IMG/VR virus record: IMGVR_UViG_3300027759_004177
Location: 124,001-188,000 of that record
DNA length: 64,000 nucleotides
Reading direction: 5' to 3' (one strand)
Shown: one piece after another, positions 1-15,254 of the stretch
Position numbering within the stretch: position 1 is the stretch's first letter
Layout: each line of letters opens with the position of its first letter
The notes under the pieces: model-generated
What the model saw: only the letters and a program-made list of their open reading frames with translations
Database searches by the model: none
Told to the model about the DNA's origin: nothing
Position numbers and translations under genes: made by a program

Positions 1-793
1 ATACTCTTTTTGTTTCTCTTATGACACTAGATCCACTGATGGCAGTTACGTTCAATAGGTATGTGGAACTATCAGCATCATATACTACTGTTCCACCAGT
101 GGCATTGACATTACTAAAATCACTGTGATCGTAGTATCTTGCTTTGCTGTCGAACAATGTGTATGGTTCGCTGACACGCAGTCTACCAAACGCATCAGTT
201 GATCCTGAGCCTAGGGTAAATGTACTGGTTCCTGTTAATGTAGCAGTTACATTGCCATCTACTGTAATACTGCCACCGCCATCAGCAATGTTTACATTAC
301 CGGTAACACCGGGCATTTGTGTAATGCTCACATTGCCAGTGATACCTGGCAGTTGACCAATGTTTACATTACCACTCACTCCTACGGTGCCTGTGATGGC
401 TGGTAGTGTTGTTATAGCAACTATGTTGCCCAAGATTGCAACGTTACCTGTGACGCTAACATTGCCTGTGATTGAGGGCAAGGTTGTTATACCAGTGATG
501 TTGCCCGTAACAGTAACATTAGCGTTGCCGGTTGTTACCCAAGGTGTTGTACCTTGATTGACAACCAACACATTGCCAACAAGATACACCGGTATACGTT
601 GTGCTTCGGTGTTGTTGACTCTAACAGCATCAAGTACATTGACATTACCACTTACTGTGATGTTGTCAGACCCAAGGGTCACACGTAGGTGTGGTTCACC
701 TGATGTATCATAGGTTAATGCTTTGTGAACATTTAATAGGTTAGGTTCATTGGGATGAACGTAGTTGGTGCTGTTAGGATTCTGTACGCCCAT
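1..793 (-). CDS. Virion structural protein, partial (runs off window start); G-N-V/I-T-rich repeats followed by DAFGRLRVSEPYTLFD motif
   Basis: Not in ORF track. ATG at 793 overlaps the TAA of the upstream gene (TAATG). Hand translation MGVQNPNSTNYVHPNEPNLL...TDAFGRLRVSEPYTLFDSK stays open to the window edge. Confidence 0.75.
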   Translation of the reverse strand, partial: MGVQNPNSTNYVHPNEPNLLNVHKALTYDTSGEPHLRVTLGSDNITVSGNVNVLDAVRVNNTEAQRIPVYLVGNVLVVNQGTTPWVTTGNANVTVTGNITGITTLPSITGNVSVTGNVAILGNIVAITTLPAITGTVGVSGNVNIGQLPGITGNVSITQMPGVTGNVNIADGGGSITVDGNVTATLTGTSTFTLGSGSTDAFGRLRVSEPYTLFDSKARYYDHSDFSNVNATGGTVVYDADSSTYLLNVTAISGSSVIRETKRV

Positions 794-1674
794 TACACTT
801 TGATACCAATAAAGATTTGACTTTGTCTACCTGCCGCCCAGGTGTTGCTGTTAGTGGATCCGTATCCAGTGTTGATTGCTGAACGTGTACCAGCATCTAG
901 GGCTGATGCATCGTATGTTACCAATACCACAATGCGGCCACTGGCCACACTGGTCAGTGCCGATGACAATGCTGTTAAATTGGCAGGACTAATGTATGTA
1001 TCATATTGAGTGGCTGCTGTGACAACATCACCATATGAATCTAACACTACCAAGTTGTGGCCACGGCCATATGGGTTTGGTGCATCACCTTGACGTAGTA
1101 CTTCAATGTCGTTGACCACTACTCTAGCAGGTTGAAAACTGGGAACATCATAGGTTGATGATTCTGCATAAATCTTGTTGCCACTCACATACTGTGTGGT
1201 TGATATTGCTGTGGTTGTGCCAAATGCTTCGTAGAATGTAAAAGCACTGACAGTAGAAATCCATGGACGACCCACGGTTAATCCGCTGGTGTTGGGATTG
1301 TTAACTATGGCATTGTTGTTGTATTGTGTTGGCAACGCAGAAAGATCATAAGTTGCTCTTGCTTCACCACTGGCAACTCGGTCCAGGGCGGCCAAATCCA
1401 GTTTGGCTTTTTGTTTGAGTTCTTTGGTGGCAAGACGACCAATTTTATTGTTTGTACGCAGTCTAGTTCCAGAGACGATACCAAGACTGGACAATGTTGC
1501 TGATCCACTGGCCACGGATCCATTTAATACTATATCATACCAGGTGCTGTCAAAACCACGTGCTGAATTAACGGCTGTTTTTAATTGGTTGATAGTTTGA
1601 GCATTGTCGATAGTGTAACTGTCGTACAAAGCTGTGTTTAATAAACTTTGAACTGTGATGGTGATGTTGGCCAT
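793..1674 (-). CDS. Protein with N-terminal ubiquitin-like domain and C-terminal ILEI/PANDER-like domain, probably virion-associated
   Basis: Residues 1-75 follow the ubiquitin pattern (TINQLK..V....GF, IVLNG, TLSSLGI..G..L). C-terminus GRGHNLVVLD...YDTY...GRIVVLVTYDAS matches ILEI. Confidence 0.65.
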   Translation of the reverse strand: MANITITVQSLLNTALYDSYTIDNAQTINQLKTAVNSARGFDSTWYDIVLNGSVASGSATLSSLGIVSGTRLRTNNKIGRLATKELKQKAKLDLAALDRVASGEARATYDLSALPTQYNNNAIVNNPNTSGLTVGRPWISTVSAFTFYEAFGTTTAISTTQYVSGNKIYAESSTYDVPSFQPARVVVNDIEVLRQGDAPNPYGRGHNLVVLDSYGDVVTAATQYDTYISPANLTALSSALTSVASGRIVVLVTYDASALDAGTRSAINTGYGSTNSNTWAAGRQSQIFIGIKV

Positions 1675-2042
1675 TAGCGGGCTCCTGCTTGGAATCCTGG
1701 ATACATGCTGGGAGCATTGGTACGAATGTCTGCGGGATTTTTACGACTGTGCATGTCATCACCACCTGGGAAAGCAGCACCAACGGGAGCGGTTACTTCG
1801 TTAGGCTCATTGGCATACTGTGTTTGTACACCGCAATCAGCTTCTGGCGCCTCTAATCCAGCCAACTGTTGGATCACTGCCAACAAGTCTGGTTCTGGTG
1901 ATTCTGGTTCCACGGCGATCTGCATCACAGGCTCATCTGGTGCAACAGCCAAGGCGGCAATGGCATCAGGAGCAGGTTGTGCAGGTGTATCTGTAGCATC
2001 TACTAGATCTAATACTCCGCGGATAATGTCTGTTATTCTCAT
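1674..2042 (-). CDS. Acidic hypothetical protein, likely head-associated
   Basis: 122-aa ORF coupled to neighbours; N-terminus MRITDII. Confidence 0.7.
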   Translation of the reverse strand: MRITDIIRGVLDLVDATDTPAQPAPDAIAALAVAPDEPVMQIAVEPESPEPDLLAVIQQLAGLEAPEADCGVQTQYANEPNEVTAPVGAAFPGGDDMHSRKNPADIRTNAPSMYPGFQAGAR

Positions 2043-2056
2043 ATTGTACTTATTGG

Positions 2057-4477
2057 TTAAAAGCCAGCGGCTTTGAGTCTTGCTGCCAATTGATCTAAAG
2101 CACCACCAACTGTGCTCACATTTGATGTCCAGTTTTGATAGTTGGCCATGGTGTAACTCACATTGGTCAATACTGTTAAACTACGTGCTGTGATGTTTCC
2201 TACGTTGGCATTGCCTGAAGTGTAGTTGAACTCAATAAACTTGTTGTCAAAGGTATCATCATTTTTGTAGATACCAAAGTGTGAATGTGGGCCTGTGCCG
2301 CGATTGTCTGTTCCGGTGCTGGCAGCGTCCCACCAAGCATAACCTAAAATAGTACTGCCACGCTGTGTGCCAGTGTTGTTTCTAAAGTCGATACTGATGT
2401 TGCCGGTGTTGTCTCCGGTACCAGGGCTACCATCACCAATGTGCAACCAGTATCCAGGATTGGTATTGTTGATACCGGTGTAGTCTTGTATGGCTATTTC
2501 GCCAGAACCGGCCGAGTTTAAGATAATGCCATTGCTTGCTCCACCTGCTGTACCAATTGTGGTGTCTGAGAATGTCAGGTTACCTGCTGTGGTAAATGAT
2601 GAGCTGTAGTTTGTACCATTGGCCCAGAATATTCCGCTGGATGTTATGATATTGCCTAGATTGGCCAGGCCGAACGCATCCACAGTACGGATGTTGCCCA
2701 CAATGGCTTGGTCGTAGATCAGGGCTGTGTTGGAAGCTATATTACCGGTTTCGGTTAGTGGTGTTTGTACGCTGGTTCCTGCCAAAATAAAAGTTGCGGA
2801 TTGTATATTACCACTAGTGAATAATTGTTTCCACTGCTTGCTGGCGCTACCAATACTGTACGTGTTATTAGTTACTGGAATCAAATTGCCCACAATGGCA
2901 CTCAAGTTGGCCACCGGAGCTATCAACACATTCGACGCTGTGATGTTGGCACGTAGGTTACCAATTTCCACGTTGGCGGCTGTGGTATTTGCTGTAGTAA
3001 TTAAGTTGAAGGACGTGATCGTGGCATTGGCAGCTGTGATGTTGGCACGTAGACTATTAATTTGTACGTTGGCCGCTGTGATGTTGGCACGTAGGCTACC
3101 AATCTCTACATTGGCCGAAGCTACATTGGCATTTACAACTGTTATTGCTGTGCTTTGTGTAGCAGCATTGGCAAACAAAGTAGTAATATTAGTAGTTGCT
3201 GTGCCAAGATTGGCATTGATAGTATCAATTTGTACAGCCTGTGTTACAGCGTTGGCTGTCCAGGCTGAGGTCACTGTGTCAACATAACTCTTCATGCCAG
3301 TGTTGGCTGTGATGATGGCCGCATTGGCAGCTGTAATGTTGGCACGTAGGTTATTTGTGTCTGTATATCCGGTGGCAATGTTAGTTGTGGCTGTACCCAG
3401 ATTAGCGTCTAAGGTAACTATTCTGGCATTGGCAGCAGTTACATTGGCATTGATTGCAACAACTGAAGGTAAATTGGCCTGCAAGCTGGCCACATTCGTT
3501 TGTAAACCGACGATGTTGGTAGTAGCTGTGCCAAGATTGGCATCGATGGTGTTGAGCTGACTGCCTTGTGCGACTGCGTTAGCAGACAACGCAATTAATT
3601 CAGCAACCTGAACTTGTGCATTGGCCTGCAAGGCTGCAATGGTCACTTGTTGTGCCACAGTATTGGCTGTCAGTGTACCAAGGGTGTCTGCTTGTGCAGC
3701 AGCATTTACTGTAAGTACCGCCAACGATAGGGATTGTGTAGCAGCGTTGGCAGTTAGAGTGTCTAAGGTTGCGGCTTGCGTGGCCGCATTGGCCAACAGG
3801 GAGGTAATATTTGTTGTGGCTGTGCCCAAGTTGGCATCCAGGGTAACTATTCTGGCATTGGCAGCAGTGACTCTATTGGTATTGGTTGAGATGTCAGTGC
3901 TTTGTGTGGCAGAATTGGCCAACAGAGTGGTAATATTTGTTGTGGCAGTACCTAGGTTAGCATTAATAGCTATGTTGGCCGATATCAAACTGGTCACGCT
4001 GGTATTGACACCGCCCAAGTTTGCTTCAATATTTTGTATGCGTAGATTAGCCGCAGTGACATTGGCATTGATTTGCGCCACATTGGCATTGACCGGTGCA
4101 AGTGTATTGCCAGAAACTATCAATGCATTGGCAATACTGGCAATATTACTGGATAAATTTGCACTGACCTGGGCATACACATTGGCAGTGATGTTACTGG
4201 TGGTTGTTGCGTACAAGGTATTGGCGTAAACATTGGCTGCAGTGGTTTGAGCAATAACGTTGGCCAAGCTGGCAGCGCCTAAAATATCATTTGTATACAG
4301 CGTGATGTTGCCTGTGCGTCCAGCCACAGTTCTTACTGGTGCATCAACGGTGATATTGGCATTACCTGCGGTAATATTAGCAAAATTTAAATTGATTATT
4401 TCAAATGCGTGTCTTAGCGTGTCACCCGTTAAATCGTTTGGAGCGGCACCTAAGTAGACGTTTGCAAAAGTACTCAT
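2057..4477 (-). CDS. Tail fibre/baseplate-attached fibre protein
   Basis: N-terminal LGAAPNDLTGDTLRHAFEIINLNF resembles the T4 gp9/gp10-type anchor; long A/N/T coiled repeats; late promoter upstream. Confidence 0.8.
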   Translation of the reverse strand: MSTFANVYLGAAPNDLTGDTLRHAFEIINLNFANITAGNANITVDAPVRTVAGRTGNITLYTNDILGAASLANVIAQTTAANVYANTLYATTTSNITANVYAQVSANLSSNIASIANALIVSGNTLAPVNANVAQINANVTAANLRIQNIEANLGGVNTSVTSLISANIAINANLGTATTNITTLLANSATQSTDISTNTNRVTAANARIVTLDANLGTATTNITSLLANAATQAATLDTLTANAATQSLSLAVLTVNAAAQADTLGTLTANTVAQQVTIAALQANAQVQVAELIALSANAVAQGSQLNTIDANLGTATTNIVGLQTNVASLQANLPSVVAINANVTAANARIVTLDANLGTATTNIATGYTDTNNLRANITAANAAIITANTGMKSYVDTVTSAWTANAVTQAVQIDTINANLGTATTNITTLFANAATQSTAITVVNANVASANVEIGSLRANITAANVQINSLRANITAANATITSFNLITTANTTAANVEIGNLRANITASNVLIAPVANLSAIVGNLIPVTNNTYSIGSASKQWKQLFTSGNIQSATFILAGTSVQTPLTETGNIASNTALIYDQAIVGNIRTVDAFGLANLGNIITSSGIFWANGTNYSSSFTTAGNLTFSDTTIGTAGGASNGIILNSAGSGEIAIQDYTGINNTNPGYWLHIGDGSPGTGDNTGNISIDFRNNTGTQRGSTILGYAWWDAASTGTDNRGTGPHSHFGIYKNDDTFDNKFIEFNYTSGNANVGNITARSLTVLTNVSYTMANYQNWTSNVSTVGGALDQLAARLKAAGF

Positions 4478-4508
4478 TGTTTTAACCCTATTATAGAGTA
4501 TTTATCGA

Positions 4509-5894
4509 TTAGTACGTTTGTTTCCACCCCGTTATGGTCTTGGTCCAGATAGCTTTGACGTTTGACCAGGTATTTGTGGCAGTTTTTACCTTGACATTGG
4601 CTACATAACCCCAGGTATCGGCGGCTGTTTTAACAGTTGTTCCGCCACTGGATACCATTTGATAAACTACATTACCGTATGGAACACCTACACCAGTTAC
4701 TGGATCCCAATTAGAACTTGCGGCGTATCCTGTAGTTAACAGGCTTGCATTATTTCCTGTTAAAATATCGTAGTACGCATTGAGATTTCCGTATAGTATA
4801 GGATGTATAGCATTAGGTATCGGACGTCGACTAGTTAAAGACGTATATCTAGCAAACATACCAGCCATAATAGGTGCGGCAGCACTTGTCCCAGACACAG
4901 ACTCAACTCTACCTATGTTATTTCCGCTATAAGTCATCCATACTCCGTAGGCGTTCATAGCTGCGGCAATATCTGGTACACCACGACCAATATCAGAACT
5001 TATAGTACCGCTAGTTAATGTAATATTTGGCCCATAAGAAGAATTAGAAGCAAAATATTTTCTATAGGTTAATCCATTTTGCCAAGTTGGTACTGCAATC
5101 ATTGAACTTATACCACCCGAACCACCAAAACCCGGTGTATTACCAATTTGACTATTATTATAAACTGTTTCGTTTGAACGTAACGTATTACCAGAAAATA
5201 CCGATAAATTGGTGCCTCCCACTGCTATCACATTGTGATTAGTTGATGGATAGTCTACTGTTACAATATTTCCAGTTAGTGTGGCAGAACTACCATAATC
5301 TCCAGCAGCTATAAAAACTGTAATTCCCTTAGCAGAAGCATTTGACAACGGTACTGCTAAAAAATCTCCGCAGTAATAATTTGGATATACGTTACTGTAA
5401 ATTTCTCCAAGGCCCCAACTAATGGTAATGATATCACAATCTTCATCCACTGCTCGTTGTATAGCATTACCAAAACTACTAGTTCTATTGGTAATGTTTG
5501 CTAACGTAACATTAGAACTATATGTAATGGAATTGTTATTGCCTTTATACAATACAATATTAGCTTTTGGGACCATACTAGCAACACATACTAAATCTAA
5601 CATATTTTCTACATCGTTGCTAACGCCATTATAACTATTAGTAGCACCATCAACACCAACAAATGTTACAGTGGGTGCCGTTAAACTTATATTTGCTAAT
5701 GATTTACTAAGATCACTTTGACTAAACCCGCCGTCTAGACTAATAATACCAACTTTAACATTGGCTCCGGTGTTAATAGGAATATTGTATGCTGTTGCTA
5801 CCTTAGGTCCAGTAAGTAAGGAACCCTCGCTAATGCTACTAGCGTGTGGTAATGCTTCAACTGAAGTTATATACGAGGATACGTTAGCTATCAT
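4509..5894 (-). CDS. S53 (sedolisin/kumamolisin-like) serine peptidase with virion-type C-terminal tail
   Basis: ENMLD (Glu/Asp), AAGDYG oxyanion Asp, RGVPDIAA, SGTSAAAP catalytic Ser, WDPVTGVG calcium-site motif. Confidence 0.9.
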   Translation of the reverse strand: MIANVSSYITSVEALPHASSISEGSLLTGPKVATAYNIPINTGANVKVGIISLDGGFSQSDLSKSLANISLTAPTVTFVGVDGATNSYNGVSNDVENMLDLVCVASMVPKANIVLYKGNNNSITYSSNVTLANITNRTSSFGNAIQRAVDEDCDIITISWGLGEIYSNVYPNYYCGDFLAVPLSNASAKGITVFIAAGDYGSSATLTGNIVTVDYPSTNHNVIAVGGTNLSVFSGNTLRSNETVYNNSQIGNTPGFGGSGGISSMIAVPTWQNGLTYRKYFASNSSYGPNITLTSGTISSDIGRGVPDIAAAMNAYGVWMTYSGNNIGRVESVSGTSAAAPIMAGMFARYTSLTSRRPIPNAIHPILYGNLNAYYDILTGNNASLLTTGYAASSNWDPVTGVGVPYGNVVYQMVSSGGTTVKTAADTWGYVANVKVKTATNTWSNVKAIWTKTITGWKQTY

Positions 5895-5897
5895 GTC

Positions 5898-8153
5898 TTA
5901 AAATGTCTGATACCAAATATCGCCAATGTTACCTTGTGTGATTGAGGGTGCGTAACTGTTGACGTAAACATTACGAGCCACGTTGGATGTCATAGCAACA
6001 TTACCACGACTGTATACCAATCCAGTTGCGGTCAAACTGCTAGCATACAAGTTTCCGTTGTAACTGTTCAAATAACCAAACACATTAGCATTGCCAAAAC
6101 TGCCTGCGCCAAATGCGAGATTGGCGTAGGTTTGATATGCACCCAAGTTGGCCGTAATTGCATTAATGCTTGTTTGCTGTGTTGCTGAGTTGGCATTGGC
6201 AAAAGTTTGATATGCCGCCAGTCCAGTTGTAATAGTACCAATACTGGTACTCTGACTCACAGCATTGGCATTGGCAAAAGTTTGATATGCACCCAGGTTA
6301 GCATTAATAGATGCTAACGAAGCATTGACCACAGTTTGATGTAAACCCAAGTTGGCATTGATTGTGTTGATACTGGTTGTTTGTGTGGCAGCATTGGCAT
6401 TGGCCGCAGTCAGGTACCCAGTCCAGGTTGGGTTAGTTGGTAGATACGCGGCCACGTTGGCATTGCTGTAAGTGGCACCAGCAAATGCTACATTGGCGTA
6501 ATTGTAGAACGCACCAACATTGGCTGACAGCGTTGCAGAAGCTGTGTTGGCATAGGTCTGATAAGCACCAATGTTGGCGTTAACAGCAACAATTTGTGCA
6601 TATTGAGTTGCGGCATTGCTGAACAATGTGGTTACACTTGTTGCCAGGCCAGACACATTGGCATTGGCAAATGTCTGATACGCACTGATATTGGCGTTGT
6701 TGGTAGATACCAAACTTGCAATTACAAGGTTGGCAGCTGTGATGTTGGCACGTAAGGCATTGGTTTCTGTTAAGCCAGTGGCAATGTTTGTGGTAGCAGT
6801 ACCAAGGTTGGCATCTAGGTATCGTATGTTACCGTGCTGGGTGGCAGCATTGGCAGTCAAGTTGGCCAAGGTTGATGCTTGAACTCCAGCATTGCTCAAC
6901 AACAATCCATTGACTGTAGTAGCAATTGATCCAAGATTGGCATCAATGGTGTTGATACTGGTTGCTTGTGTTGCGGCATTGGCCGTCAAGTTGGCCAAGG
7001 TTGAACCTTGTGTGGCTGCATTACTTAATAGCGTAGAAATATTAGCGGCAAAGCCACCAACGTTGGCATCCAAGCTGGTCACACGAGCATTGGCCGCAAT
7101 CATATTGGCCTGTAAACTAGAAATGTTTATGGTAGCAGTTCCAAGATTGGCCTTGGTAGTTACGTTGTCAGCACTCAATGGATTCAGTATATTAGATACC
7201 AGTGTACCAATGTTGGCGTCGATGAATACAATGCGAGCATTGGCTGCTGTTACATTGGCATTGATTGTGTTGATGCTGGTGTGTTGAGTAGCAGAGTTGG
7301 CATTGGCATAAATTTGATATGCACCCAGGTTGGCTTGTATGCTACCAATAGCAGAGTTAGCATAGGTTTGATACACACCCAAGTTGGCGTTAATTGTGTT
7401 AAGGACATTTGCTTGTGAAGCCGCATTGGCATTGGCTGTGGTCAAATAACCAGTCCAAGTTGGGTTGGTAGGCAAGTACGCAGCCACCGTGGCGTTGCCA
7501 TAAGTTCCGCCGCTGAATGTGGCATTGGCATAGGTCTGGAACGCACCCAAGTTGGCCGTAATGGTATTGGAGTAAGTTTGGAACGCACCCAGGTTAGAAT
7601 TGATAGCATTGACTTGTACCGCTTGTGTTACAGCATTGCTGGACAATGTGGACACGTTTGAAGTCAGCGTTGTGATGTTGGCATTGATTGGAGCCAACAA
7701 GTTTCCAGAGTTAAGAGAAGCTGTGACAGTTTCTACCACGTTGGCAGCCAAATTGGCAGTCACTCTGGCATCAACATAGGTTTTCATGGCCAAGTTGGCA
7801 GTAACAATAGCGGCATTGGTTGCTGTTAATCTAGCATTGAGTACGGAATTGGTTGGGAAATTTGCTTGAAGATAAACGTTGGAAGCGACGCCCGGTATGT
7901 CGCTGAGACTTAGTATAAGGTTCCCGCCAGTTAACGTTTTTGGTTGTCCATTGACCATGGTGATGGTTCTGGGCAACACCGTGGTACCATTGTTGATATC
8001 GTATAAAGCAGCATTAATTTGTGCCACTAGGGTTTTACTACCAGTACCTAGATTGTATGCAGGAGTAACTCCCAATAGTTGCCACAACCTTGCATTGGTC
8101 ATTGCTGTGGATGGTGATGGTACTGTGCCTAGTGATATGTTTGCTATGGTCAT
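5898..8153 (-). CDS. Tail fibre-like repeat protein
   Basis: Repeats NANLGAYQTYAN and ANVAAYLPTNPTWTGYLT; C-terminal APS..GNIGDIWYQ typical of phage fibres. Confidence 0.8.
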   Translation of the reverse strand: MTIANISLGTVPSPSTAMTNARLWQLLGVTPAYNLGTGSKTLVAQINAALYDINNGTTVLPRTITMVNGQPKTLTGGNLILSLSDIPGVASNVYLQANFPTNSVLNARLTATNAAIVTANLAMKTYVDARVTANLAANVVETVTASLNSGNLLAPINANITTLTSNVSTLSSNAVTQAVQVNAINSNLGAFQTYSNTITANLGAFQTYANATFSGGTYGNATVAAYLPTNPTWTGYLTTANANAASQANVLNTINANLGVYQTYANSAIGSIQANLGAYQIYANANSATQHTSINTINANVTAANARIVFIDANIGTLVSNILNPLSADNVTTKANLGTATINISSLQANMIAANARVTSLDANVGGFAANISTLLSNAATQGSTLANLTANAATQATSINTIDANLGSIATTVNGLLLSNAGVQASTLANLTANAATQHGNIRYLDANLGTATTNIATGLTETNALRANITAANLVIASLVSTNNANISAYQTFANANVSGLATSVTTLFSNAATQYAQIVAVNANIGAYQTYANTASATLSANVGAFYNYANVAFAGATYSNANVAAYLPTNPTWTGYLTAANANAATQTTSINTINANLGLHQTVVNASLASINANLGAYQTFANANAVSQSTSIGTITTGLAAYQTFANANSATQQTSINAITANLGAYQTYANLAFGAGSFGNANVFGYLNSYNGNLYASSLTATGLVYSRGNVAMTSNVARNVYVNSYAPSITQGNIGDIWYQTF

Positions 8154-8185
8154 TGCTTTAACCTTGTTATTTGTGTATTTATGGT

Positions 8186-8216
8186 AAAAAGCAGAAAGCC
8201 CGCACTTGGCGGGCTT
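8186..8216 (-). terminator. Rho-independent terminator after the UV endonuclease gene
   Basis: Stem aagcccgc/gcgggctt followed by a T-rich tract on the minus strand. Confidence 0.75.
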
Positions 8217-8235: not shown

Positions 8236-9267
8236 TTACATGCCTAGCTGTTTTGCACGTTCATAAACCTGAGCACTGGCTAGATTTTTGCCTTTTGATT
8301 CGCATTGTATGTCAAAATCTTCCCAAAATGTCAATGCCCAGTCTGTGGTTGCTTGATTCCAGTAAAAGTCTGAGTGAGCTCGCATCTTTTGTTTCTTGTA
8401 GCCCGACTCTAACAGCACAGCATGGTCCGGCGCAGAATCCACAGGATGGTCCACCAGCACATCTTCTCTGCTGACACTATAATGCATGGCTGGACGTACA
8501 CCACGCCACGAATCAATTATGCCCTTAACTCTATCATCGGTGGGTTGTATATATTCACCTGTACGTATCCAGTGGTGGTGTATGTCAAGAACCAATGCAC
8601 AGTCTTGGGCAAGTTCAAGGCTGCTGTCGACTCCCCAGGCATTTTCGTCGTTTTCGATTGTAATACAGTTTCTTGCTTCGGGAGATAACCGTCTGAGGGC
8701 ATCTCGAATACCGGCTGGACCGCGTTTACCCGAGATGTGGACATTGATCTTGAAGTCTTGAAACGTCCGACCGTATCCCATCCATCTGACCATATCTGCA
8801 TGATATTCAAACTCCTGTATTGATCTTTCTACAATGCCGGGATTCTCACTTGCCAGCACACAAAACTGTCCTGGATGAAACGATAAACGCACATCTAGTC
8901 TACGTGCTGTTTCACCAATGGGTGCAAAGATGCGTTCTAAATGGTCCTGTATTGATCTATCTTGCCACCAGTCAATCCAATCTTTTTCAGTGTAGCCTTG
9001 TAGCATTTCACTACCCAGTCGCACCATGCGTCGTTCTGGTGGTAGTGTGGCCACACGCTCGATCAGTTTTACAGCCGCAACAGCGTTGTGATTCATGATG
9101 TCCCACTGACGCTGTTCCGCTTCAAGTGGATGCTCACGCAACCAACGCATGGTGGTGCTACGTCCATTGAGATCGCGATCTACAGCATTGACTTTCATAC
9201 CGCCACATTCGCTGGGGTCATTGAGCCATTTGCAACAGAAACCAATACGCTTGAGTTTAGTGGACAA
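8236..9267 (-). CDS. uvsE: UV-damage endonuclease (UvdE/UvsE)
   Basis: RIGFCC, RLSFHPGQF, HISG, IEND, LDIHHH, HYS and HSD motifs. Start moved to TTG at 9267 after a GAGGAG RBS. Confidence 0.92.
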   Translation of the reverse strand: MSTKLKRIGFCCKWLNDPSECGGMKVNAVDRDLNGRSTTMRWLREHPLEAEQRQWDIMNHNAVAAVKLIERVATLPPERRMVRLGSEMLQGYTEKDWIDWWQDRSIQDHLERIFAPIGETARRLDVRLSFHPGQFCVLASENPGIVERSIQEFEYHADMVRWMGYGRTFQDFKINVHISGKRGPAGIRDALRRLSPEARNCITIENDENAWGVDSSLELAQDCALVLDIHHHWIRTGEYIQPTDDRVKGIIDSWRGVRPAMHYSVSREDVLVDHPVDSAPDHAVLLESGYKKQKMRAHSDFYWNQATTDWALTFWEDFDIQCESKGKNLASAQVYERAKQLGM

Positions 9268-9544
9268 GATACTCCTCAAATTCCCAGTATACACTACCAC
9301 GCTTTTCTGCGTCAATGATTGCCTGCTCAAAACCTGCGTCTGCAGCGTCCAGGCAACGAAGATCAATGGCCGCATCAAGCACTTGTAATATGGCCACGCC
9401 AACTTCGTGATTGTCAGTGCCTATCAAGTTTTCACCGATATCAATCAGGCTGTCTAACACGCTGTCTAATTCGTCCATGGTCAAGTCTTCTAACCGAACA
9501 CGATTTTCTAAAAAATCTTTGATAAGTTTTTCTGGGTTTTTCAT
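9257..9544 (-). CDS. Hypothetical acidic protein
   Basis: ORF in coupled minus-strand operon. Confidence 0.7.
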   Translation of the reverse strand: MKNPEKLIKDFLENRVRLEDLTMDELDSVLDSLIDIGENLIGTDNHEVGVAILQVLDAAIDLRCLDAADAGFEQAIIDAEKRGSVYWEFEEYLVH

Positions 9545-9717
9545 TTCATCTCCATGATGCGTTTGATCACTTCCTGAGCATCTTTGTATTTACTTGTTTC
9601 CACAGCCTGCTCCAGATAGTCAAACTGCTGTTTGTGGAGATGGTTTATAAAATCTTGTATCTGATCACGGCTAATAGTGTAGCGTATCTGGTACAAGGGA
9701 TTGTCAGGTTTTTCCAT
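9541..9717 (-). CDS. Hypothetical protein (start MEKPDN)
   Basis: ATG directly after the upstream stop; ATGA overlap downstream. Confidence 0.6.
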   Translation of the reverse strand: MEKPDNPLYQIRYTISRDQIQDFINHLHKQQFDYLEQAVETSKYKDAQEVIKRIMEMK

Positions 9718-9718
9718 T

Positions 9719-9955
9719 TTATTTGTCCGTGTTGTATGGTCCAATGCCCATTTGTTTTTGATACTCTTCCTTGAGGATTTTTTTGCCGTCAATCATCATC
9801 ATACGTTTACCGGTGTCCTCGTCTGTAAATTCCAATATCCAATCACCTTCGATATCACCCGGGCACATGTATTTTTGGCAGTTGTAGACACCCACAGCAA
9901 AATGTATTACAAAATACGCCATGCCAAGAACAAACCAAAAACGCCAATGGTACAT
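9719..9955 (-). CDS. Small membrane-anchored hypothetical protein
   Basis: N-terminal hydrophobic helix; operon packing. Confidence 0.65.
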   Translation of the reverse strand: MYHWRFWFVLGMAYFVIHFAVGVYNCQKYMCPGDIEGDWILEFTDEDTGKRMMMIDGKKILKEEYQKQMGIGPYNTDK

Positions 9956-11899: not shown

Positions 11900-12214
11900 T
11901 TATTTAAATAAGATCAAGGCCATTATGACTGCTTGTAGTATAAATCCAGCACCAATGGTGATGATGTTGAACATGTCTTTGAGAATGATAGCACGTCCAA
12001 ATAACAGTACCAGGCCGGCCCACATGAACAACACTATGTCGATAGGCGGAGTACGATCACTCAACCCAGTCAGTAGTGCTAACAAGGTTGGAATGGTAGC
12101 ACAATGTATTACTATGGGTGCCAACCATCCTAGGGTGTCGGCACTGAGCTGACCAAAATGATTGCTAAAAAATTTACTTATAACAGGTTTGAAATTGTTG
12201 ATATCGAATTTCAT
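11900..12214 (-). CDS. Small three-TM membrane protein (PQ-loop/SemiSWEET-like)
   Basis: Three hydrophobic helices; LGWLA...IPT. Confidence 0.55.
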   Translation of the reverse strand: MKFDINNFKPVISKFFSNHFGQLSADTLGWLAPIVIHCATIPTLLALLTGLSDRTPPIDIVLFMWAGLVLLFGRAIILKDMFNIITIGAGFILQAVIMALILFK

Positions 12215-12792
12215 CGGTTTTCCCTATAAAAAATGTGACGACCAATTTTGGCCACTTGTGGTTTGCCCCAGCGTGGGTTTACATAGTCAGCATGATAATA
12301 CATGGCTTCCTTCATGCTGGGCAAACGGAAGTTTTCCAGTAGAACTTTTTTGGCCACTTCTTCACTTTCTTTGTAGTGTGCCGCATAAATGGGTTTGACT
12401 CGGCTGACACCATCACAGGTCCAACTGAACTGGCAAACGATTTTTTCATAGATTACATTTTTTTGATAAACCACACCGCACACATCACGTCCAAAGCGAC
12501 CGTCTTCCACACGGTTCATAGTAACTTGTGCTACTGCCACTTTGCCTTCAAACGGTTCTGTTGCGGCTTCGTAATAAATGTTTTTGGTCAAGCATTCCAA
12601 TTGTTTGGTCCGCTCTGTGACACTCACAAATCCCTGACGATAAACTTCGTTGTCGACTTTGAGAGTTTGTAATTTGGTATTGGTAACTACAACAACCACA
12701 GCAACCAAAACCATAAAGCAAATTAAACGCATTGATGTTTTTACTAGTTGAACAGCATCAAGGTGTTTAATCTTATCCAAAATTGCGATCAT
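12211..12792 (-). CDS. Cell wall hydrolase SleB/Hydrolase_2 with N-terminal TM anchor
   Basis: CLTKNIYYEA, GKVAVAQVTMNRV, VVYQ, CQFSW, YYHADYVNPRW, IGRHIFY. Confidence 0.9.
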   Translation of the reverse strand: MIAILDKIKHLDAVQLVKTSMRLICFMVLVAVVVVVTNTKLQTLKVDNEVYRQGFVSVTERTKQLECLTKNIYYEAATEPFEGKVAVAQVTMNRVEDGRFGRDVCGVVYQKNVIYEKIVCQFSWTCDGVSRVKPIYAAHYKESEEVAKKVLLENFRLPSMKEAMYYHADYVNPRWGKPQVAKIGRHIFYRENR

Positions 12793-12848
12793 ATAATTCC
12801 TCCTTTTTTGGACTTCGTAGTTCTATTTAAGTATCGAAAACAATAGTA

Positions 12849-12877
12849 ATAATACTATATAAGTGACGCAAAGTCAA
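12849..12877 (-). promoter_or_regulatory. sigma70-type promoter
   Basis: TTGACT-N17-TATTAT. Confidence 0.6.
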
Positions 12878-12916
12878 GGTAAGTATTGCCCAATGGCGAA
12901 AAACGCAGTTAAAACC

Positions 12917-14923
12917 CTACTTATTCTGGGATAAGTATGTAGTTAATGACACGTTTTGAGCCTGACTTTGGTAGATTTTGAGTCTGGGATCAGGATTGTT
13001 GTAGATATTTACACCTACCCCATTTAGGGCACGAGTGTTGAGAGTTTCGGCGACCGCGGCCCGAATTGAGTCTCCGGCCGCATCATTGGTTATAATATTG
13101 GCAAAAAACTGGTATCCTTCAACTTGTGTTTTGTCGCTGGCTGTTTGACCAATATTTTCAGCAAAACCCAAAAGACCCAATGTGGTACCCGATGTGAATA
13201 CTACTCCGGCACGATTCAAGTTGGCCACTTCGACAGCAACACGATCCAACATTGTGTACCACCCGGTGTTACAAACGGATGTGGCATCGGCCAATGTACC
13301 GGTAGTTGGTAATGAACTCAGTGCAGAGTTTACTGTTGTAACATTTGAAGTTATGATAGAAAACGGCAACAACAAAAGTGGATTGGGTGGCGTTCCATCC
13401 CCGGCACCTTCACTGCTTTCAGGAATTTCTGACGCCAAATATGCATTGTAAGCATTGCTGTAATCAATGATGGCCCGGTCGAGACTGGCCAAGGATGTGG
13501 TAATGCCTGCCTGGTTAGCCAATGTGTTATAGTTAGAATTTATAACATAGAATTTATTGGTGTAAGGATCACCGGCACAGGCACCAAGATAATCAACCAT
13601 TACAGGATTGCCCAGGGCTCCTGATCCGGTACCAAATGCATTGGTCAATGTGGTGACAGTACTGCCGTACAATATATTAGATGCAGAATTGGCTGTCAAA
13701 TACGATAAAGTTGGAGTTTCTAAAGTTAGCAAAAATCTGCTCATTTCTGCCCAAGACCTAAATCTGGCCTGTCCAAGTTTTTTTCCAAGGTACTGACCAA
13801 GCTCTGTGAATGTGTATATTCCCAAGGCATTTAGTGCTGAGTATAAGTTGGCTGGCACTACCTTGTTAAGATCGAGATAATCTGCTAGAGTTAACAATTG
13901 ACTGGCGTTGCCAGTACTGGTTGTTATTCCAGTTGCTGTAACTGCAGCGGCCAAATTGCCGCCGGTAACAGTTTTATAAATGTTCAGTACCACAGTAGGA
14001 CTATTGCCAGTGACAGCTTCTGTTATTGTTGTTTCTTTGAGTGTTGGAAATTCTATTTCGCCCACAAACGAAGAAACAGTGGTCATTACTTCTTCTTGTA
14101 TGGTGGTGGTTTTGACCGCTGGAACATCGGGCAGGTTGGTGATATCCAGGCCCACATTGGTCAATTGATCTGCCAGGGCATTCAGATAACCTAGATTTTG
14201 ATTTAATATGTTTTGACCAAACACATAAGGATCACCGATTTGTGTAATGTTGTTGATATCATACATGGTTCCCCAATTGGCCACGACATTGGCTAATAAA
14301 ACAGCATTGGTGCCAATACCATTGGTAACTAAATCTGTTGGACCAGCAAATCCCACTCCTGTTTGGGCATAGGTTGTATTTCTCAACATCGACATAGAAC
14401 TTACTGTATCAAAAACCTGTTGGGCATAACCTTGACTACGCTGATATATGTTGGCAAATCCCGAATAGCCCGAATCAAAAGGCAATTGGGCCTGTTTTTT
14501 AACAATGCCGCTAACACCAGTGAGTGTACAGTTTTTGATCACGTTACCATTAAATGATGCGCCAAATACATTTCCCGTGGTGGTATAAATTTTTCCAAGA
14601 TGTGATATAAAGCTGCCGGTTGCAATCACGGTATTGGCAGTCCAGGCAGTGATCGACGCACTACTGGTAGGAGTTACATTGCCTGGATATAGGTCTAATA
14701 AAAAATGACCAGACGTTATGGTACTGCCGATGGTATTTAATTGAGAGACAATGTTGGCAGTTTGACTGGGTGAAATACCCGAGTTGATGTAACAGTTGGC
14801 AAATGACGCTAAAGCCGAGTTGGTTTGATAGGCGGAGATATTGGCTAGTAGTGCCGGACTAGCACCAAGGCCTTGGCTGTTGATGATACTGCTGGTGGCA
14901 TTTAACGCAATGGCTGTGGCCAT
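12917..14923 (-). CDS. Virion structural protein (baseplate/tail region)
   Basis: 668-aa T/N/A/G-rich ORF directly downstream of PAAR. Confidence 0.65.
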   Translation of the reverse strand: MATAIALNATSSIINSQGLGASPALLANISAYQTNSALASFANCYINSGISPSQTANIVSQLNTIGSTITSGHFLLDLYPGNVTPTSSASITAWTANTVIATGSFISHLGKIYTTTGNVFGASFNGNVIKNCTLTGVSGIVKKQAQLPFDSGYSGFANIYQRSQGYAQQVFDTVSSMSMLRNTTYAQTGVGFAGPTDLVTNGIGTNAVLLANVVANWGTMYDINNITQIGDPYVFGQNILNQNLGYLNALADQLTNVGLDITNLPDVPAVKTTTIQEEVMTTVSSFVGEIEFPTLKETTITEAVTGNSPTVVLNIYKTVTGGNLAAAVTATGITTSTGNASQLLTLADYLDLNKVVPANLYSALNALGIYTFTELGQYLGKKLGQARFRSWAEMSRFLLTLETPTLSYLTANSASNILYGSTVTTLTNAFGTGSGALGNPVMVDYLGACAGDPYTNKFYVINSNYNTLANQAGITTSLASLDRAIIDYSNAYNAYLASEIPESSEGAGDGTPPNPLLLLPFSIITSNVTTVNSALSSLPTTGTLADATSVCNTGWYTMLDRVAVEVANLNRAGVVFTSGTTLGLLGFAENIGQTASDKTQVEGYQFFANIITNDAAGDSIRAAVAETLNTRALNGVGVNIYNNPDPRLKIYQSQAQNVSLTTYLSQNK

Positions 14924-14924
14924 G

Positions 14925-15254
14925 TCATGGACCTACATATACGTTGGGAATACCTTCGGTGACAAAATGTTGTCCACAAGTGCAAGGTGCACCTAACATG
15001 GCAACTGGTCGCCATTCTACTAGAATGTTGGGAATACCCTGTGCTATCACTGCAGCGGCACAGACTGGATTAAATCCAGGTGCTTTGGGATTGTAAGGAT
15101 TGCCGTGTATAGTAATCAAAGATCCCACATAAGCCGTTGGCAAGCCAGCTGTACCAACTCTTACAGTCTGGGCTCCAAGTGCTATAACTCCCGGGGGTGG
15201 TGGAAATCCATTGACACTTGCAGGGATTCCACAGCTGGCTATTGGTACTGGCAT
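14925..15254 (-). CDS. PAAR-like spike-tip protein
   Basis: GAQTVRVG..GLPTAYVGS..HG, GIPNILV..RPVA..G..CTCG.H. Confidence 0.8.
   Translation of the reverse strand: MPVPIASCGIPASVNGFPPPPGVIALGAQTVRVGTAGLPTAYVGSLITIHGNPYNPKAPGFNPVCAAAVIAQGIPNILVEWRPVAMLGAPCTCGQHFVTEGIPNVYVGP

What the first reader, a model, noticed from the sequence alone, without database searches (positions are those of the whole stretch)
793..1674. Ubiquitin-like domain fused to an ILEI-like domain in the fibre module
Seen: the first ~75 aa align by eye with ubiquitin (ITVQSL/IFVKTL, TINQLKTAV..RGF/TIENVKAKI..EGI, IVLNG/LIFAG, TLSSLGI/TLSDYNI). There is no exposed C-terminal GG. A linker ending GRPW leads to an ILEI/PANDER-like domain. 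Known: ILEI occurs in FAM3 proteins and in the carbohydrate-binding POMGnT1 stem, and bacterial Ubl-conjugation defence systems modify phage virion proteins. Inference: either a glycan-binding virion appendage with a eukaryote-like Ubl, or a decoy against host E1/E2-type defence.
Basis: partly seen in the sequence, partly recalled or inferred. Interest (0 to 1): 0.62.

Follow-up and report, generated by a model that had tools for sequence, protein, structure and literature searches.

The report
Ubiquitin-like head on phage lectin protein
A freshwater jumbo phage encodes a protein with a genuine ubiquitin-fold domain, a conserved anchor segment and a sugar-binding ILEI/GG domain; the ubiquitin-fold and sugar-binding parts are both optional modules that related phages drop or exchange, as expected of a modular host-adhesion protein and not of a ubiquitin-signalling one.

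Summary
Window 793..1674 (minus strand) encodes a 293-aa protein with three parts.

- **Residues 1-75:** a ubiquitin-family beta-grasp (Z 14-15, rmsd 1.2-1.9 A to ubiquitin). The family profile finds ubiquitin and ISG15 by sequence. This copy alone is below Pfam's cut-off.
- **Residues 76-140:** a highly conserved segment ending GRPW. It models poorly on its own.
- **Residues 141-293:** an ILEI/FAM3/POMGnT1-stem ("GG") domain, above Pfam's cut-off. The residues matching POMGnT1's sugar-binding Arg129/Asp179/Arg207 are invariant.

The surroundings change the reading.
- The Ubl is facultative: about half of 46 related loci, and 90 of the 120 closest linker matches, lack it.
- The lectin is exchangeable. 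At the same genomic slot the Ubl+linker head is fused to ConA-like LamG or PA14/GLEYA domains, or stands alone.
- Only the linker is constant.
- The gene sits between a conserved small acidic ORF and a virion structural protein, in a PAAR / cell-wall-hydrolase / fibre region.
- The Ubl has no Gly-Gly tail, and the phage has no ThiF-type E1 or Prok-JAB.

Best reading: a modular glycan-binding accessory of the adsorption apparatus carrying a non-conjugatable Ubl. ILEI domains in phage fibres are already known. A ubiquitin-family head on such proteins appears undescribed. The Ubl's role is unresolved.

The parts
793..1674 (-). Whole gene, 293 aa (P0001): Ubl, then conserved linker, then ILEI/GG domain. 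Stop codon at 793..795.
1450..1674 (-). Residues 1-75: ubiquitin-family beta-grasp core. It is facultative in the family.
   Evidence: AF2 pLDDT 89. Z 14-15 to ubiquitin. Profile finds ISG15 at 4.8e-6. PF00240 matches 18 of 42 relatives. The domain is absent from about half of related loci.
1255..1449 (-). Residues 76-140: conserved linker/anchor (N-K-I-x-R-L-A-T-K-E-L-[KR]-Q-K-A-K-L-D-L-A ... L-P-T-Q-Y ... G-R-P-W). It is the only part present in every architecture.
   Evidence: Most invariant columns fall here. A helix is predicted at 84-101, and pLDDT is below 50 for 106-144. Ubl-less forms start M-A/S-x-N-G-I at this point.
1261..1272 (-). GRPW motif (G135-W138), the module boundary.
   Evidence: It is read directly from the sequence. 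All alternative C-terminal domains begin after it, and head-only ORFs stop just after it.
796..1254 (-). Residues 141-293: ILEI / FAM3 / POMGnT1-stem ('GG') lectin-type domain. The Pfam match covers 204-292 (nt 799..1065). Putative sugar-contact residues are R204 (1063..1065), D255 (910..912) and R283 (826..828).
   Evidence: All three residues are invariant. The roles of POMGnT1 Arg129/Asp179/Arg207 are taken from PMC9802357 and PMC9437275.
1674..2042 (-). Small acidic ORF, 122 aa. Its TAA stop overlaps the ATG of the Ubl-ILEI gene (TAATG). It is a conserved companion gene with an N-terminal MRxTDIIRGxLDxID helix and a C-terminal K-N/H-P-A/S-D-I-R-...-S-M-Y-P motif.
1..793 (-). First 264 codons of a 575-aa phrog_1645 'virion structural protein'. 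The gene runs off the window start. Its ATG overlaps the stop of the Ubl-ILEI gene (TAATG).
   Evidence: phrog_1645 E 4.2e-108. 43-45% identity to virion structural proteins of T4-like cyanophages.
2057..4477 (-). 806-aa N/A/T-rich, repeat-rich fibre-like protein. It is a lineage-specific neighbour.
   Evidence: It is absent from the same slot in L006 and L007.
4509..5894 (-). 461-aa S8 subtilase lying between the fibre-like genes.
   Evidence: PF00082 E 7e-16. An S8 gene occupies the same slot in L057.
5898..8153 (-). 751-aa fibre-like repeat protein.
12211..15254 (-). Upstream tail-tip context: PAAR-motif protein (14925..15254), a 668-aa protein (12917..14923) and a cell-wall hydrolase (12211..12792).
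   Evidence: The same order is seen in L006 and L007.

Best explanation
The gene encodes a modular accessory protein of the phage's host-adsorption apparatus. The constant element is a conserved segment of about 65 residues (76-140, ending GRPW). I infer that it folds only on binding a partner and anchors the protein to a virion component. On its C-terminal side it carries an exchangeable carbohydrate-binding domain. Here that is an ILEI/GG domain with the POMGnT1-type Arg/Asp/Arg sugar site. In sister phages it is a ConA-like LamG domain, a PA14/GLEYA domain, or nothing. On its N-terminal side it carries an optional ubiquitin-family beta-grasp. That domain cannot be conjugated, because it has no Gly-Gly and its tail positions continue into the anchor. 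It is therefore an integral Ubl of the kind that serves as a protein-protein adaptor or folding aid.

Shown: the three domains, their folds, their modularity, the synteny, and the absence of a ThiF-type E1 and a Prok-JAB peptidase.
Inferred: virion incorporation, glycan binding, the anchor role of the linker, and the adaptor role of the Ubl.
For: Domains and folds.

Sugar site: POMGnT1 Arg129 aligns with R204 and Asp179 with D255. Arg207 corresponds to R283 by identical +28 spacing. All three are invariant. Their sugar-binding role comes from PMC9802357 and PMC9437275.

Same fold in phage adhesion proteins: Bacillus phage JL tail fibre, pW4 receptor-binding protein, and gp35 hinge connectors of RB16, PS2 and Makalu. 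It is also reported for the T4 kneecap (bioRxiv 10.64898/2026.03.06.709160) and for streptococcal phage Tal CBM_1 (PMC9437275).

Modularity:
- The Ubl profile finds the Ubl+linker head on proteins of 131-536 aa.
- Their C-terminal domains are Laminin_G_3, GLEYA/PA14 or ILEI.
- The PA14 and LamG forms lie in the same slot, after the small ORF.
- Head-only ORFs are followed directly by the phrog_1645 gene.
- Ubl-less forms make up 21 of 42 tree rows and 90 of the 120 best linker matches.

Context:
- TAATG overlaps link the small ORF, this gene and the phrog_1645 virion protein.
- PAAR, a cell-wall hydrolase and fibre-like genes lie upstream.
- In L001 the gene after next downstream (731 aa) matches minor tail protein families.

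No ThiF, no Prok-JAB and no second Ubl were found in the 357-kb genome.
Against: - There is no direct evidence that the protein is in the virion. No cultured relative was found and there is no proteomics.
- No glycan-binding assay exists. The third sugar-site residue is placed by spacing only.
- The anchor role of the linker rests on its conservation and low stand-alone confidence.
- The one complex prediction tried gave no verdict.
- If the Ubl and the lectin are both dispensable, the core function could be something other than adhesion.
- The PHROG label 'virion structural protein' is an annotation and was not tested here.
Confidence: 0.6

Rival explanations
1. It is a T4 gp35-like hinge ('kneecap') connector. 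The ILEI domain would be a purely structural joint linking the two long fibre-like proteins encoded upstream, with no role in sugar recognition.
For: - The ILEI/PANDER-like domain is one of three domains of the T4 kneecap gp35 (bioRxiv 10.64898/2026.03.06.709160). The GG domain was first noted in gp35 (cited in PMC10276149).
- phrog_1154 'long tail fiber proximal connector' matches at E 0.001.
- Foldseek finds gp35 proteins of RB16, PS2 and Makalu.
- The gene follows two fibre-like genes.
Against: - The gp35 match covers only the shared ILEI fold; nothing of gp35's other two domains (tower-like, CBM-like) was matched.
- The fibre-like neighbours are absent from the same slot in L006 and L007, while this gene is kept.
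- The ILEI domain is replaced by unrelated lectin folds, or by nothing, at the same position. That fits poorly with a fixed structural joint.
- The sugar-site residues are invariant.
Confidence: 0.13
2. The Ubl is a counter-defence module. It would mimic the host's Ubl and so block or divert a Bil-type (or similar) E1/E2 system that conjugates Ubls to phage tail-fibre proteins.
For: - Bacterial Bil systems conjugate a Ubl to the phage central tail fibre (bioRxiv 10.1101/2023.09.04.556158).
- The Ubl here sits on a protein of the adsorption region.
- It is present or absent among near-identical phages, needing at least 5 state changes on the core tree with 0 of 500 label shuffles as low. Such patchiness is typical of arms-race modules.
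Against: - There is no Gly at the position equivalent to the ubiquitin C-terminus. The tail positions are conserved as N-K-I-x-R-L and continue into a helix, so it cannot be adenylated or conjugated.
- It is always joined to the anchor segment and is not clearly free-standing.
- The phage has no ThiF-type E1 and no Prok-JAB peptidase.
- Strongly supported branches alone force only one change of state.
- Patchiness is equally expected of host-range modules.
- The host and its defence systems are unknown.
Confidence: 0.08
3. It is not a virion protein. It would be an intracellular or released phage factor that binds host glycans or cell-envelope precursors during infection. It might be linked to the curli-type secretion genes (CsgG, CsgF) that these phages carry.
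For: - Virion incorporation is untested.
- The phage carries CsgG, curlin-repeat, FecR-domain and autotransporter-domain genes 9-20 kb downstream. A relative carries CsgF.
- Eukaryotic FAM3 proteins are secreted.
Against: - The N-terminus MANITITVQSLL does not look like a signal peptide (by eye; no predictor was run).
- The gene is joined by TAATG overlaps to a protein whose cyanophage homologues are annotated virion structural proteins.
- PAAR, a hydrolase and fibre-like genes lie upstream.
- A conserved N-terminal part with a swapped C-terminal lectin is the usual layout of receptor-binding proteins.
Confidence: 0.12
4. The Ubl is a removable pro-domain. It would be cleaved off during assembly, by analogy with lambda tail assembly protein I and its JAB peptidase, possibly by the S8 subtilase encoded nearby.
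For: - Lambda and T1 tail assembly protein I carries an N-terminal Ubl and is predicted to be processed by the neighbouring JAB peptidase (PMC1779556).
- An S8 peptidase lies 2.8 kb upstream here and in the same slot in L057.
- Ubl-less forms begin exactly at the Ubl/linker junction.
Against: - That Ubl is of the ThiS/MoaD type, has a conserved C-terminal Gly and pairs with JAB. None of these apply here.
- The S8 gene is missing from the slot in L006 and L007, which still have the Ubl.
- No cleavage motif is evident.
Confidence: 0.05

Closest known systems
POMGnT1 stem domain / FAM3 (ILEI, PANDER) 'GG' domain, Pfam PF15711
   Same: The fold matches (Foldseek 5ggi_B at 26% identity over 136 columns; 5lc4). 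Pfam scores above its cut-off. The Arg/Asp/Arg residues that contact GlcNAc in POMGnT1 are invariant here.
   Different: The protein is phage-encoded and shows no obvious signal peptide. It has no glycosyltransferase partner domain. It is preceded by a phage-specific anchor segment and a Ubl. Sugar binding is untested.
Phage T4 gp35, the long-tail-fibre hinge connector or 'kneecap'
   Same: Both contain an ILEI/PANDER-like domain. Both genes lie among fibre genes (bioRxiv 10.64898/2026.03.06.709160).
   Different: The match to gp35 is confined to the shared ILEI fold. gp35 has no Ubl and no GRPW-ending anchor. Here the ILEI domain is exchangeable for other lectins.
Carbohydrate-binding modules on siphophage adhesion devices, such as Streptococcus phage TP-778L Tal CBM_1
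   Same: Both are POMGnT1-stem-like modules with the Arg and Asp kept. Both sit on phage host-adhesion proteins built from interchangeable lectin modules (PMC9437275).
   Different: Those modules are embedded in long trimeric Tal extensions. This is a small stand-alone protein with its own anchor and a Ubl head, from a jumbo phage of about 357 kb.
Ubiquitin-family integral UBL domains, such as DSK2, Rad23 or parkin N-termini (Pfam PF00240)
   Same: Both are N-terminal, non-cleaved, ubiquitin-fold domains without a conjugatable Gly-Gly. The profile finds ubiquitin, ISG15, FAT10 and DSK2.
   Different: Identity to ubiquitin is only 17-20%. There is a 2-residue insertion between strands 1 and 2 (the register against ubiquitin shifts from +3 to +5). 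The context is a phage, with no proteasome or UBA partners. The domain is facultative within the family.
Lambda/T1 tail assembly protein I (TAPI) Ubl
   Same: Both are ubiquitin-like beta-grasp domains at the N-terminus of a protein encoded in a phage tail/host-specificity gene cluster (PMC1779556).
   Different: TAPI's Ubl is ThiS/MoaD-related, ends in a conserved Gly, is followed by a Gly-rich linker and sits next to a JAB/NlpC peptidase. Here the best family is PF00240, there is no Gly, and no Prok-JAB is found in the genome.
Bil-type bacterial Ubl conjugation defence
   Same: A ubiquitin-like fold is associated with phage tail-fibre proteins (bioRxiv 10.1101/2023.09.04.556158).
   Different: There the Ubl is host-encoded and is attached after translation through its C-terminal Gly by an E1/E2 pair. 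Here it is phage-encoded, genetically fused and not conjugatable.

Membership tests
Ubiquitin family / beta-grasp (PF00240) | Beta-grasp fold (beta-beta-alpha-beta-beta with a mixed sheet gripping one helix) | tested here: met
   AF2 on the domain alone gives pLDDT 89.2 and pTM 0.75. Target-normalised TM to ubiquitin is 0.86-0.91. Z is 14-15 with rmsd 1.2-1.9 A over 74-78 residues.
Ubiquitin family / beta-grasp (PF00240) | Sequence match to the Pfam model above its gathering score | tested here: inconclusive
   The window's copy scores 11.6 bits against a cut-off of 25.4 (E 0.25). Homologous Ubls in relatives pass: P0146 34.0, P0159 30.8 and P0234 26.2 bits. 18 of 42 relatives match at E<0.01. 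The family profile finds ISG15 at 4.8e-6.
Conjugatable Ubl (ubiquitin, ISG15, Bil Ubl, TAPI) | Exposed C-terminal Gly or Gly-Gly, or a site that releases one | tested here: not met
   The positions equivalent to ubiquitin 71-76 read N-K-I-G-R-L. They are conserved and lead into helix 84-101.
Conjugatable Ubl (ubiquitin, ISG15, Bil Ubl, TAPI) | Associated E1, E2 or deubiquitinase/JAB genes | tested here: not met
   ThiF (PF00899) and Prok-JAB (PF14464) have no match at E<=1 in the 356,865-bp genome. E2 (UQ_con) and other deubiquitinase families were not searched.
ILEI / FAM3 / GG-type lectin domain (PF15711) | Pfam match above the gathering score | tested here: met
   44.6 bits against a cut-off of 27, E 2.1e-11, residues 204-292. 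41 of 42 relatives match.
ILEI / FAM3 / GG-type lectin domain (PF15711) | FAM3 / POMGnT1-stem fold over the whole domain | tested here: met
   Foldseek finds 5lc4 (152 columns) and 5ggi_B (136 columns, rmsd 3.2, 26% identity).
ILEI / FAM3 / GG-type lectin domain (PF15711) | Sugar-contact residues Arg129, Asp179 and Arg207 of POMGnT1 | tested here: met
   Arg129 aligns with R204 and Asp179 with D255 in the HMM alignment. Arg207 corresponds to R283 by +28 spacing only. All three are invariant in the family.
ILEI / FAM3 / GG-type lectin domain (PF15711) | Actual carbohydrate binding | not testable with these tools
   This needs a glycan array or pull-down with the recombinant domain.
T4 gp35 hinge connector (kneecap) | Three-domain architecture: tower-like, ILEI-like and CBM-like | tested here: not met
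   Only the ILEI part matches: phrog_1154 E 0.001, residues 179-257. The rest of the protein is Ubl and linker.
T4 gp35 hinge connector (kneecap) | Adjacent gp34/gp36/gp37-type fibre genes | tested here: not met
   The neighbouring 806-aa and 751-aa proteins match only phrog_19577 'minor head protein' and no long-tail-fibre families. They are missing from the slot in L006 and L007.
Modular phage receptor-binding / adhesion proteins | Conserved N-terminal part with exchangeable C-terminal binding domains at an orthologous locus | tested here: met
   The Ubl+linker head is fused to ILEI, Laminin_G_3 or GLEYA/PA14, or stands alone. The slot is the same, after the small ORF.
Modular phage receptor-binding / adhesion proteins | Presence in the virion | not testable with these tools
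   No cultured relative was found in the phage collection. Only the neighbouring genes support it.

The most novel reading that the evidence does not exclude
Freshwater jumbo phages display a genuine ubiquitin-family domain on their adsorption apparatus as a functional surface in its own right. It might shield against, or inhibit, host Ubl-conjugation immunity that targets tail fibres. Alternatively it might be a new kind of virion-displayed adaptor. Gain and loss of the domain would then track the defence repertoire of the hosts.
Probability: 0.1. Interest if true: 0.85.

Novelty: new variant of a known kind. Interest (0 to 1): 0.55.

Why it matters
ILEI/GG domains on phage fibres and swappable lectin modules are established. 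That part is a new member of a known kind.

What appears undescribed is a ubiquitin-family (PF00240-type) domain as a recurrent, optional N-terminal head on such proteins. My literature searches found no description of it. It occurs across a large group of uncultured freshwater jumbo phages. There are hundreds of relatives, some in contigs of 326-365 kb.

It gives a natural set of forms around a single conserved anchor: with and without the Ubl, with different lectins, and with no lectin. This is useful for three things:
- dissecting how accessory binding domains are attached to large phage virions;
- asking what a non-conjugatable Ubl does outside eukaryotes;
- testing whether phage-borne Ubls interact with the recently discovered bacterial Ubl-conjugation defences.

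Tried and rejected
- **Phage collection searches.** Megablast of window 1-8200 and tblastn of the protein against 50,697 phage records found nothing. There is therefore no cultured relative with proteomics.
- **Cyanophage neighbourhood.** The genes next to the phrog_1645 homologue in cyanophage S-RIM12 are unrelated to the small ORF and to this protein.
- **Hidden Ubl in the Ubl-less phage.** Searching that phage's record for a separate Ubl was not possible because the record is not held.
- **Small ORF and Ubl lost together?** In L001 a single block of about 590 bp holding both is missing. The wider survey then found the small ORF next to several Ubl-less forms, so I dropped the idea of a Ubl-specific partner.
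- **Complex prediction.** The head module (1-145) with the small ORF gave no verdict (score 0.00, controls not run). It is evidence neither for nor against binding.
- **L019 'LELVGGG'.** It looked like a ubiquitin tail. On alignment it is a short insertion inside the linker, after the N-I-I-S-T-L motif, so I did not treat it as a conjugation site.
- **Recent transfer from a eukaryote.** Not supported. Identity is 17-20%, and all ubiquitin-like folds tie at Z of about 14.
- **Kuwabara 2016 (PNAS).** The paper is not held. The residue roles are taken from two papers that cite it.
Full report
**1. What is there**

The window lies at G000:C1:124001-188000 of a 356,865-bp virus record that CheckV rates complete. 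The record is gene-dense and carries phage replication and nucleotide-metabolism genes: ribonucleotide reductase, a DnaB-like helicase, other helicases and GroEL. It is therefore a jumbo phage. Near-identical DNA is held mostly by freshwater, lake and aquatic metagenomes from 13 studies, although only two runs hold half or more of the sampled words.

The finding's coordinates are exactly one ORF on the minus strand, 793..1674, encoding 293 aa (P0001).

**2. Checking the observation**

*C-terminal domain.* Pfam ILEI (PF15711) matches residues 204-292 at E 2.1e-11, 44.6 bits against a cut-off of 27. An AlphaFold2 model built on 42 family members has a confident domain spanning about 145-293, with pLDDT mostly 80-96. 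Foldseek matches that domain to FAM3C/ILEI (5lc4) and to the POMGnT1 stem (5ggi_B: 136 columns, rmsd 3.2 A, 26% identity).

*N-terminal domain.* The window's copy alone is not significant against Pfam ubiquitin (E 0.25). The call is nevertheless sound at the family level:
- 18 of 42 relatives match PF00240 at E<0.01, and some pass Pfam's own cut-off.
- A profile of residues 1-80 finds ISG15 (4.8e-6), FAT10, DSK2 and mono-ubiquitin (3e-4) among PDB sequences.
- The domain folded alone has pLDDT 89 and pTM 0.75, with beta-grasp strand order.
- It superposes on ubiquitin, NEDD8 and ISG15 at Z 14-15, rmsd 1.2-1.9 A over 74-78 residues.

The positions equivalent to ubiquitin's LRLRGG tail read N-K-I-G-R-L and run into a helix at 84-101, so there is no Gly-Gly. 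The linker ends G135-R136-P137-W138.

**3. The middle segment is the real core**

Residues 76-140 hold most of the invariant columns of the family. Yet they model at pLDDT 39-59. That combination is typical of a segment that folds only on a partner or in an oligomer.

**4. The family and its variants**

The word search found 1,458 relatives, several in contigs of 289-365 kb. One is annotated 'Interleukin-like EMT inducer [uncultured Caudovirales phage]'.

*The Ubl is optional.*
- I fetched 46 related loci from IMG/VR and scored them by HMM. About half encode a short form that starts M-A/S-x-N-G-I-S/A-x-L-x-T-K-E-L-R-Q. That is exactly the junction where the Ubl ends in the long form (...N-K-I-x-R-L-A-T-K-E-L).
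- When the word search is scored on the linker alone, 90 of the best 120 relatives are this Ubl-less form (213-260 aa). They include copies in 326-356-kb contigs.
- On a tree of the shared linker + ILEI core, the Ubl state needs at least 5 changes, and 0 of 500 label shuffles need as few. The window's protein nests among Ubl-less sequences. Strongly supported branches alone force only one change, however.

*The lectin is exchangeable.* A profile of the Ubl searched against 1.84 billion representatives found eukaryotic polyubiquitins and, separately, many proteins of 131-536 aa that match end to end at their N-terminus. Those proteins keep the Ubl and the linker up to GRPW and then diverge:
- ConA-like Laminin_G_3: P0127, P0131, P0143, P0146, P0159, P0234;
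- GLEYA/PA14: P0139, P0149;
- an extra domain followed by ILEI: P0137;
- unassigned domains: P0122, P0125.

*The lectin is also optional.* 'Head-only' ORFs of 141-142 aa stop just after GRPW. In L058 such an ORF is followed, with overlapping stop and start, by the phrog_1645 gene.

The only constant part is therefore the linker. The Ubl on one side and a carbohydrate-binding fold on the other are both optional and interchangeable.

**5. Genomic context**

Both junctions of the gene are TAATG overlaps.

*Upstream* is a 122-aa acidic ORF. It belongs to a conserved family with an N-terminal MRxTDIIRGxLDxID helix and a C-terminal K-N/H-P-A/S-D-I-R...S-M-Y-P motif. This family accompanies the ILEI, LamG and PA14 forms and the Ubl-less forms alike.

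*Downstream* is a 575-aa protein that matches phrog_1645 'virion structural protein' at E 4e-108. It is 43-45% identical to proteins annotated as virion structural in T4-like cyanophages.

*Further upstream* lie glutaredoxin, a PAAR-motif protein (exactly at the cut-off), a 668-aa protein and a cell-wall hydrolase. The order is the same in distant relatives.

The two long N/A/T-rich fibre-like genes and the S8 subtilase that flank the gene in this window are present in some lineages (L057). They are absent from the slot in L006 and L007. 'Fibre module' therefore holds for this phage, but it is not the conserved context. In the Ubl-less L001 lineage, the gene after next downstream (731 aa, following a 120-aa ORF) matches minor tail protein families.

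**6. Sugar site**

PMC9802357 and PMC9437275, both citing Kuwabara 2016, state that Arg129, Asp179 and Arg207 of the POMGnT1 stem contact beta-linked GlcNAc. They also state that a streptococcal phage Tal module keeps the Arg and the Asp.

In the HMM alignment to 5ggj_A, Arg129 aligns with R204 and Asp179 with D255. I checked the chain numbering against the 92-250 construct. Arg207 lies 28 residues after Asp179, and R283 lies 28 residues after D255. All three are invariant in the family. This supports retained carbohydrate binding, but the third residue is placed by spacing only.

**7. Ubiquitin machinery**

The phage genome has no ThiF-type E1 and no Prok-JAB at E<=1. It has no second ubiquitin-like match or second head module. 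E2 and other deubiquitinase families were not searched.

**8. Interpretation**

The layout is a conserved attachment segment with exchangeable lectin folds at one locus, inside a tail-tip and virion gene region. That is the layout of modular phage adhesion proteins. Foldseek against viral models supports this. The C-terminal domain matches the Bacillus phage JL tail fibre, the pW4 receptor-binding protein and gp35 hinge connectors. Outside its own family, the Ubl matches only ubiquitins of viruses of eukaryotes.

I therefore favour a glycan-binding accessory of the adsorption apparatus, anchored by the linker (confidence 0.6). The Ubl is an integral, non-conjugatable domain. Its role as adaptor, folding aid or displayed surface is unresolved.

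The rivals are:
- a gp35-like structural hinge (0.13);
- a non-virion glycan-binding factor (0.12);
- a counter-defence mimic aimed at Ubl-conjugation immunity (0.08);
- a removable pro-domain (0.05).

**9. Relation to what is known**

- GG/ILEI domains in phage gp35 have been known since 2006 (cited in PMC10276149). They are now seen in the T4 kneecap structure (bioRxiv 10.64898/2026.03.06.709160).
- POMGnT1-stem-like modules on siphophage adhesion devices are described (PMC9437275).
- A Ubl in tail-assembly clusters is known for lambda and T1 protein I. That Ubl is ThiS/MoaD-like, ends in Gly and pairs with a JAB peptidase (PMC1779556).
- Host Bil systems attach Ubls to tail fibres (bioRxiv 10.1101/2023.09.04.556158).

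I found no description of a PF00240-type Ubl genetically fused as an optional head to modular lectin proteins of jumbo phages. The library searched is limited to open-access papers and preprints.

**10. Verdict**

There is one important correction: Ubl and ILEI are independent optional modules around a conserved anchor. The ILEI part is ordinary for phage adhesion proteins, and the Ubl head is the new element. I rate it a new variant of a known kind, with interest 0.55.

The one complex prediction I ran (head module with the small ORF) gave no verdict and is not used as evidence.

Noticed in passing
L005 (G000:C1:106001-124800): 8476-9807, 6534-7649, 5092-6531, 2607-4637, all minus strand; just outside the window: The phage encodes a CsgG-like curli secretion protein (PF03783, E 9e-42, with an SH3_4 domain). 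It also encodes a FecR-domain protein, a weak curlin-repeat protein and a protein with an autotransporter beta-domain (E 2e-14). A relative carries CsgF (L006). This is a cluster of outer-membrane secretion or amyloid-type genes in a jumbo phage.
   Followed up: no
L005:14834-15082 (-); also L001, L006 and L007: A ribosomal protein S21 gene (PF01165, E 3e-16) is conserved downstream of the module. In relatives it lies next to ClpX, HSP20 and ClpS genes.
   Followed up: no
window 4509..5894 (-): An S8 subtilase (PF00082, E 7e-16) lies between the two fibre-like genes. An S8 gene occupies the same slot before the small ORF in L057. A role in fibre or head-module processing is possible but untested.
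   Followed up: partly
window 1..793 (-), continuing into L005:17069-18793: The phrog_1645 virion protein of this phage has an N-terminal insert of about 150 aa made of GNVxVTGN-type repeats (tandem repeat of period 36 at 286-374). The insert is absent from the L006 and cyanophage homologues.
   Followed up: partly
window 1674..2042 (-): The small acidic ORF family (80-122 aa) has conserved termini and a variable acidic, Pro-rich middle. It is nearly universal in this slot. In L001 and L010 a partial homologue lies downstream of the ILEI gene instead of upstream. Its function is unknown, and the complex prediction with the head module gave no verdict.
   Followed up: partly
L019:2997-3941 (+): This family member has a more divergent, longer Ubl and a 'VGGGAN' insertion in the linker (…NIISTLELVGGGANKEARQ…). 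It resembles a ubiquitin tail on the surface but lies after the junction motif.
   Followed up: partly
protein P0135 (452 aa, from the representative search): A 315-aa Ser/Thr/Asn/Gly-rich region of unassigned fold precedes the Ubl+linker, and the protein ends at GRPWII. The head module can therefore also be internal, or fused to an upstream fibre-like gene. The gene may be cut off by the end of its contig.
   Followed up: no
window 8236..9402 (-): A UvdE-type UV endonuclease (PF03851, E 4e-30; phrog_8420, E 3e-68) marks the upstream edge of the variable fibre/lectin slot in this phage, in L001 and in L057.
   Followed up: no
L005:15375-17003 (-): A 543-aa protein has a hydrophobic N-terminal region that looks membrane-spanning, followed by a region that looks coiled-coil (both judged by eye). 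Its conserved C-terminal domain matches phrog_11591 'virion structural protein'. The N-terminal 257 aa are 61% identical to the L006 homologue. It is conserved two to three genes downstream of the lectin gene.
   Followed up: partly
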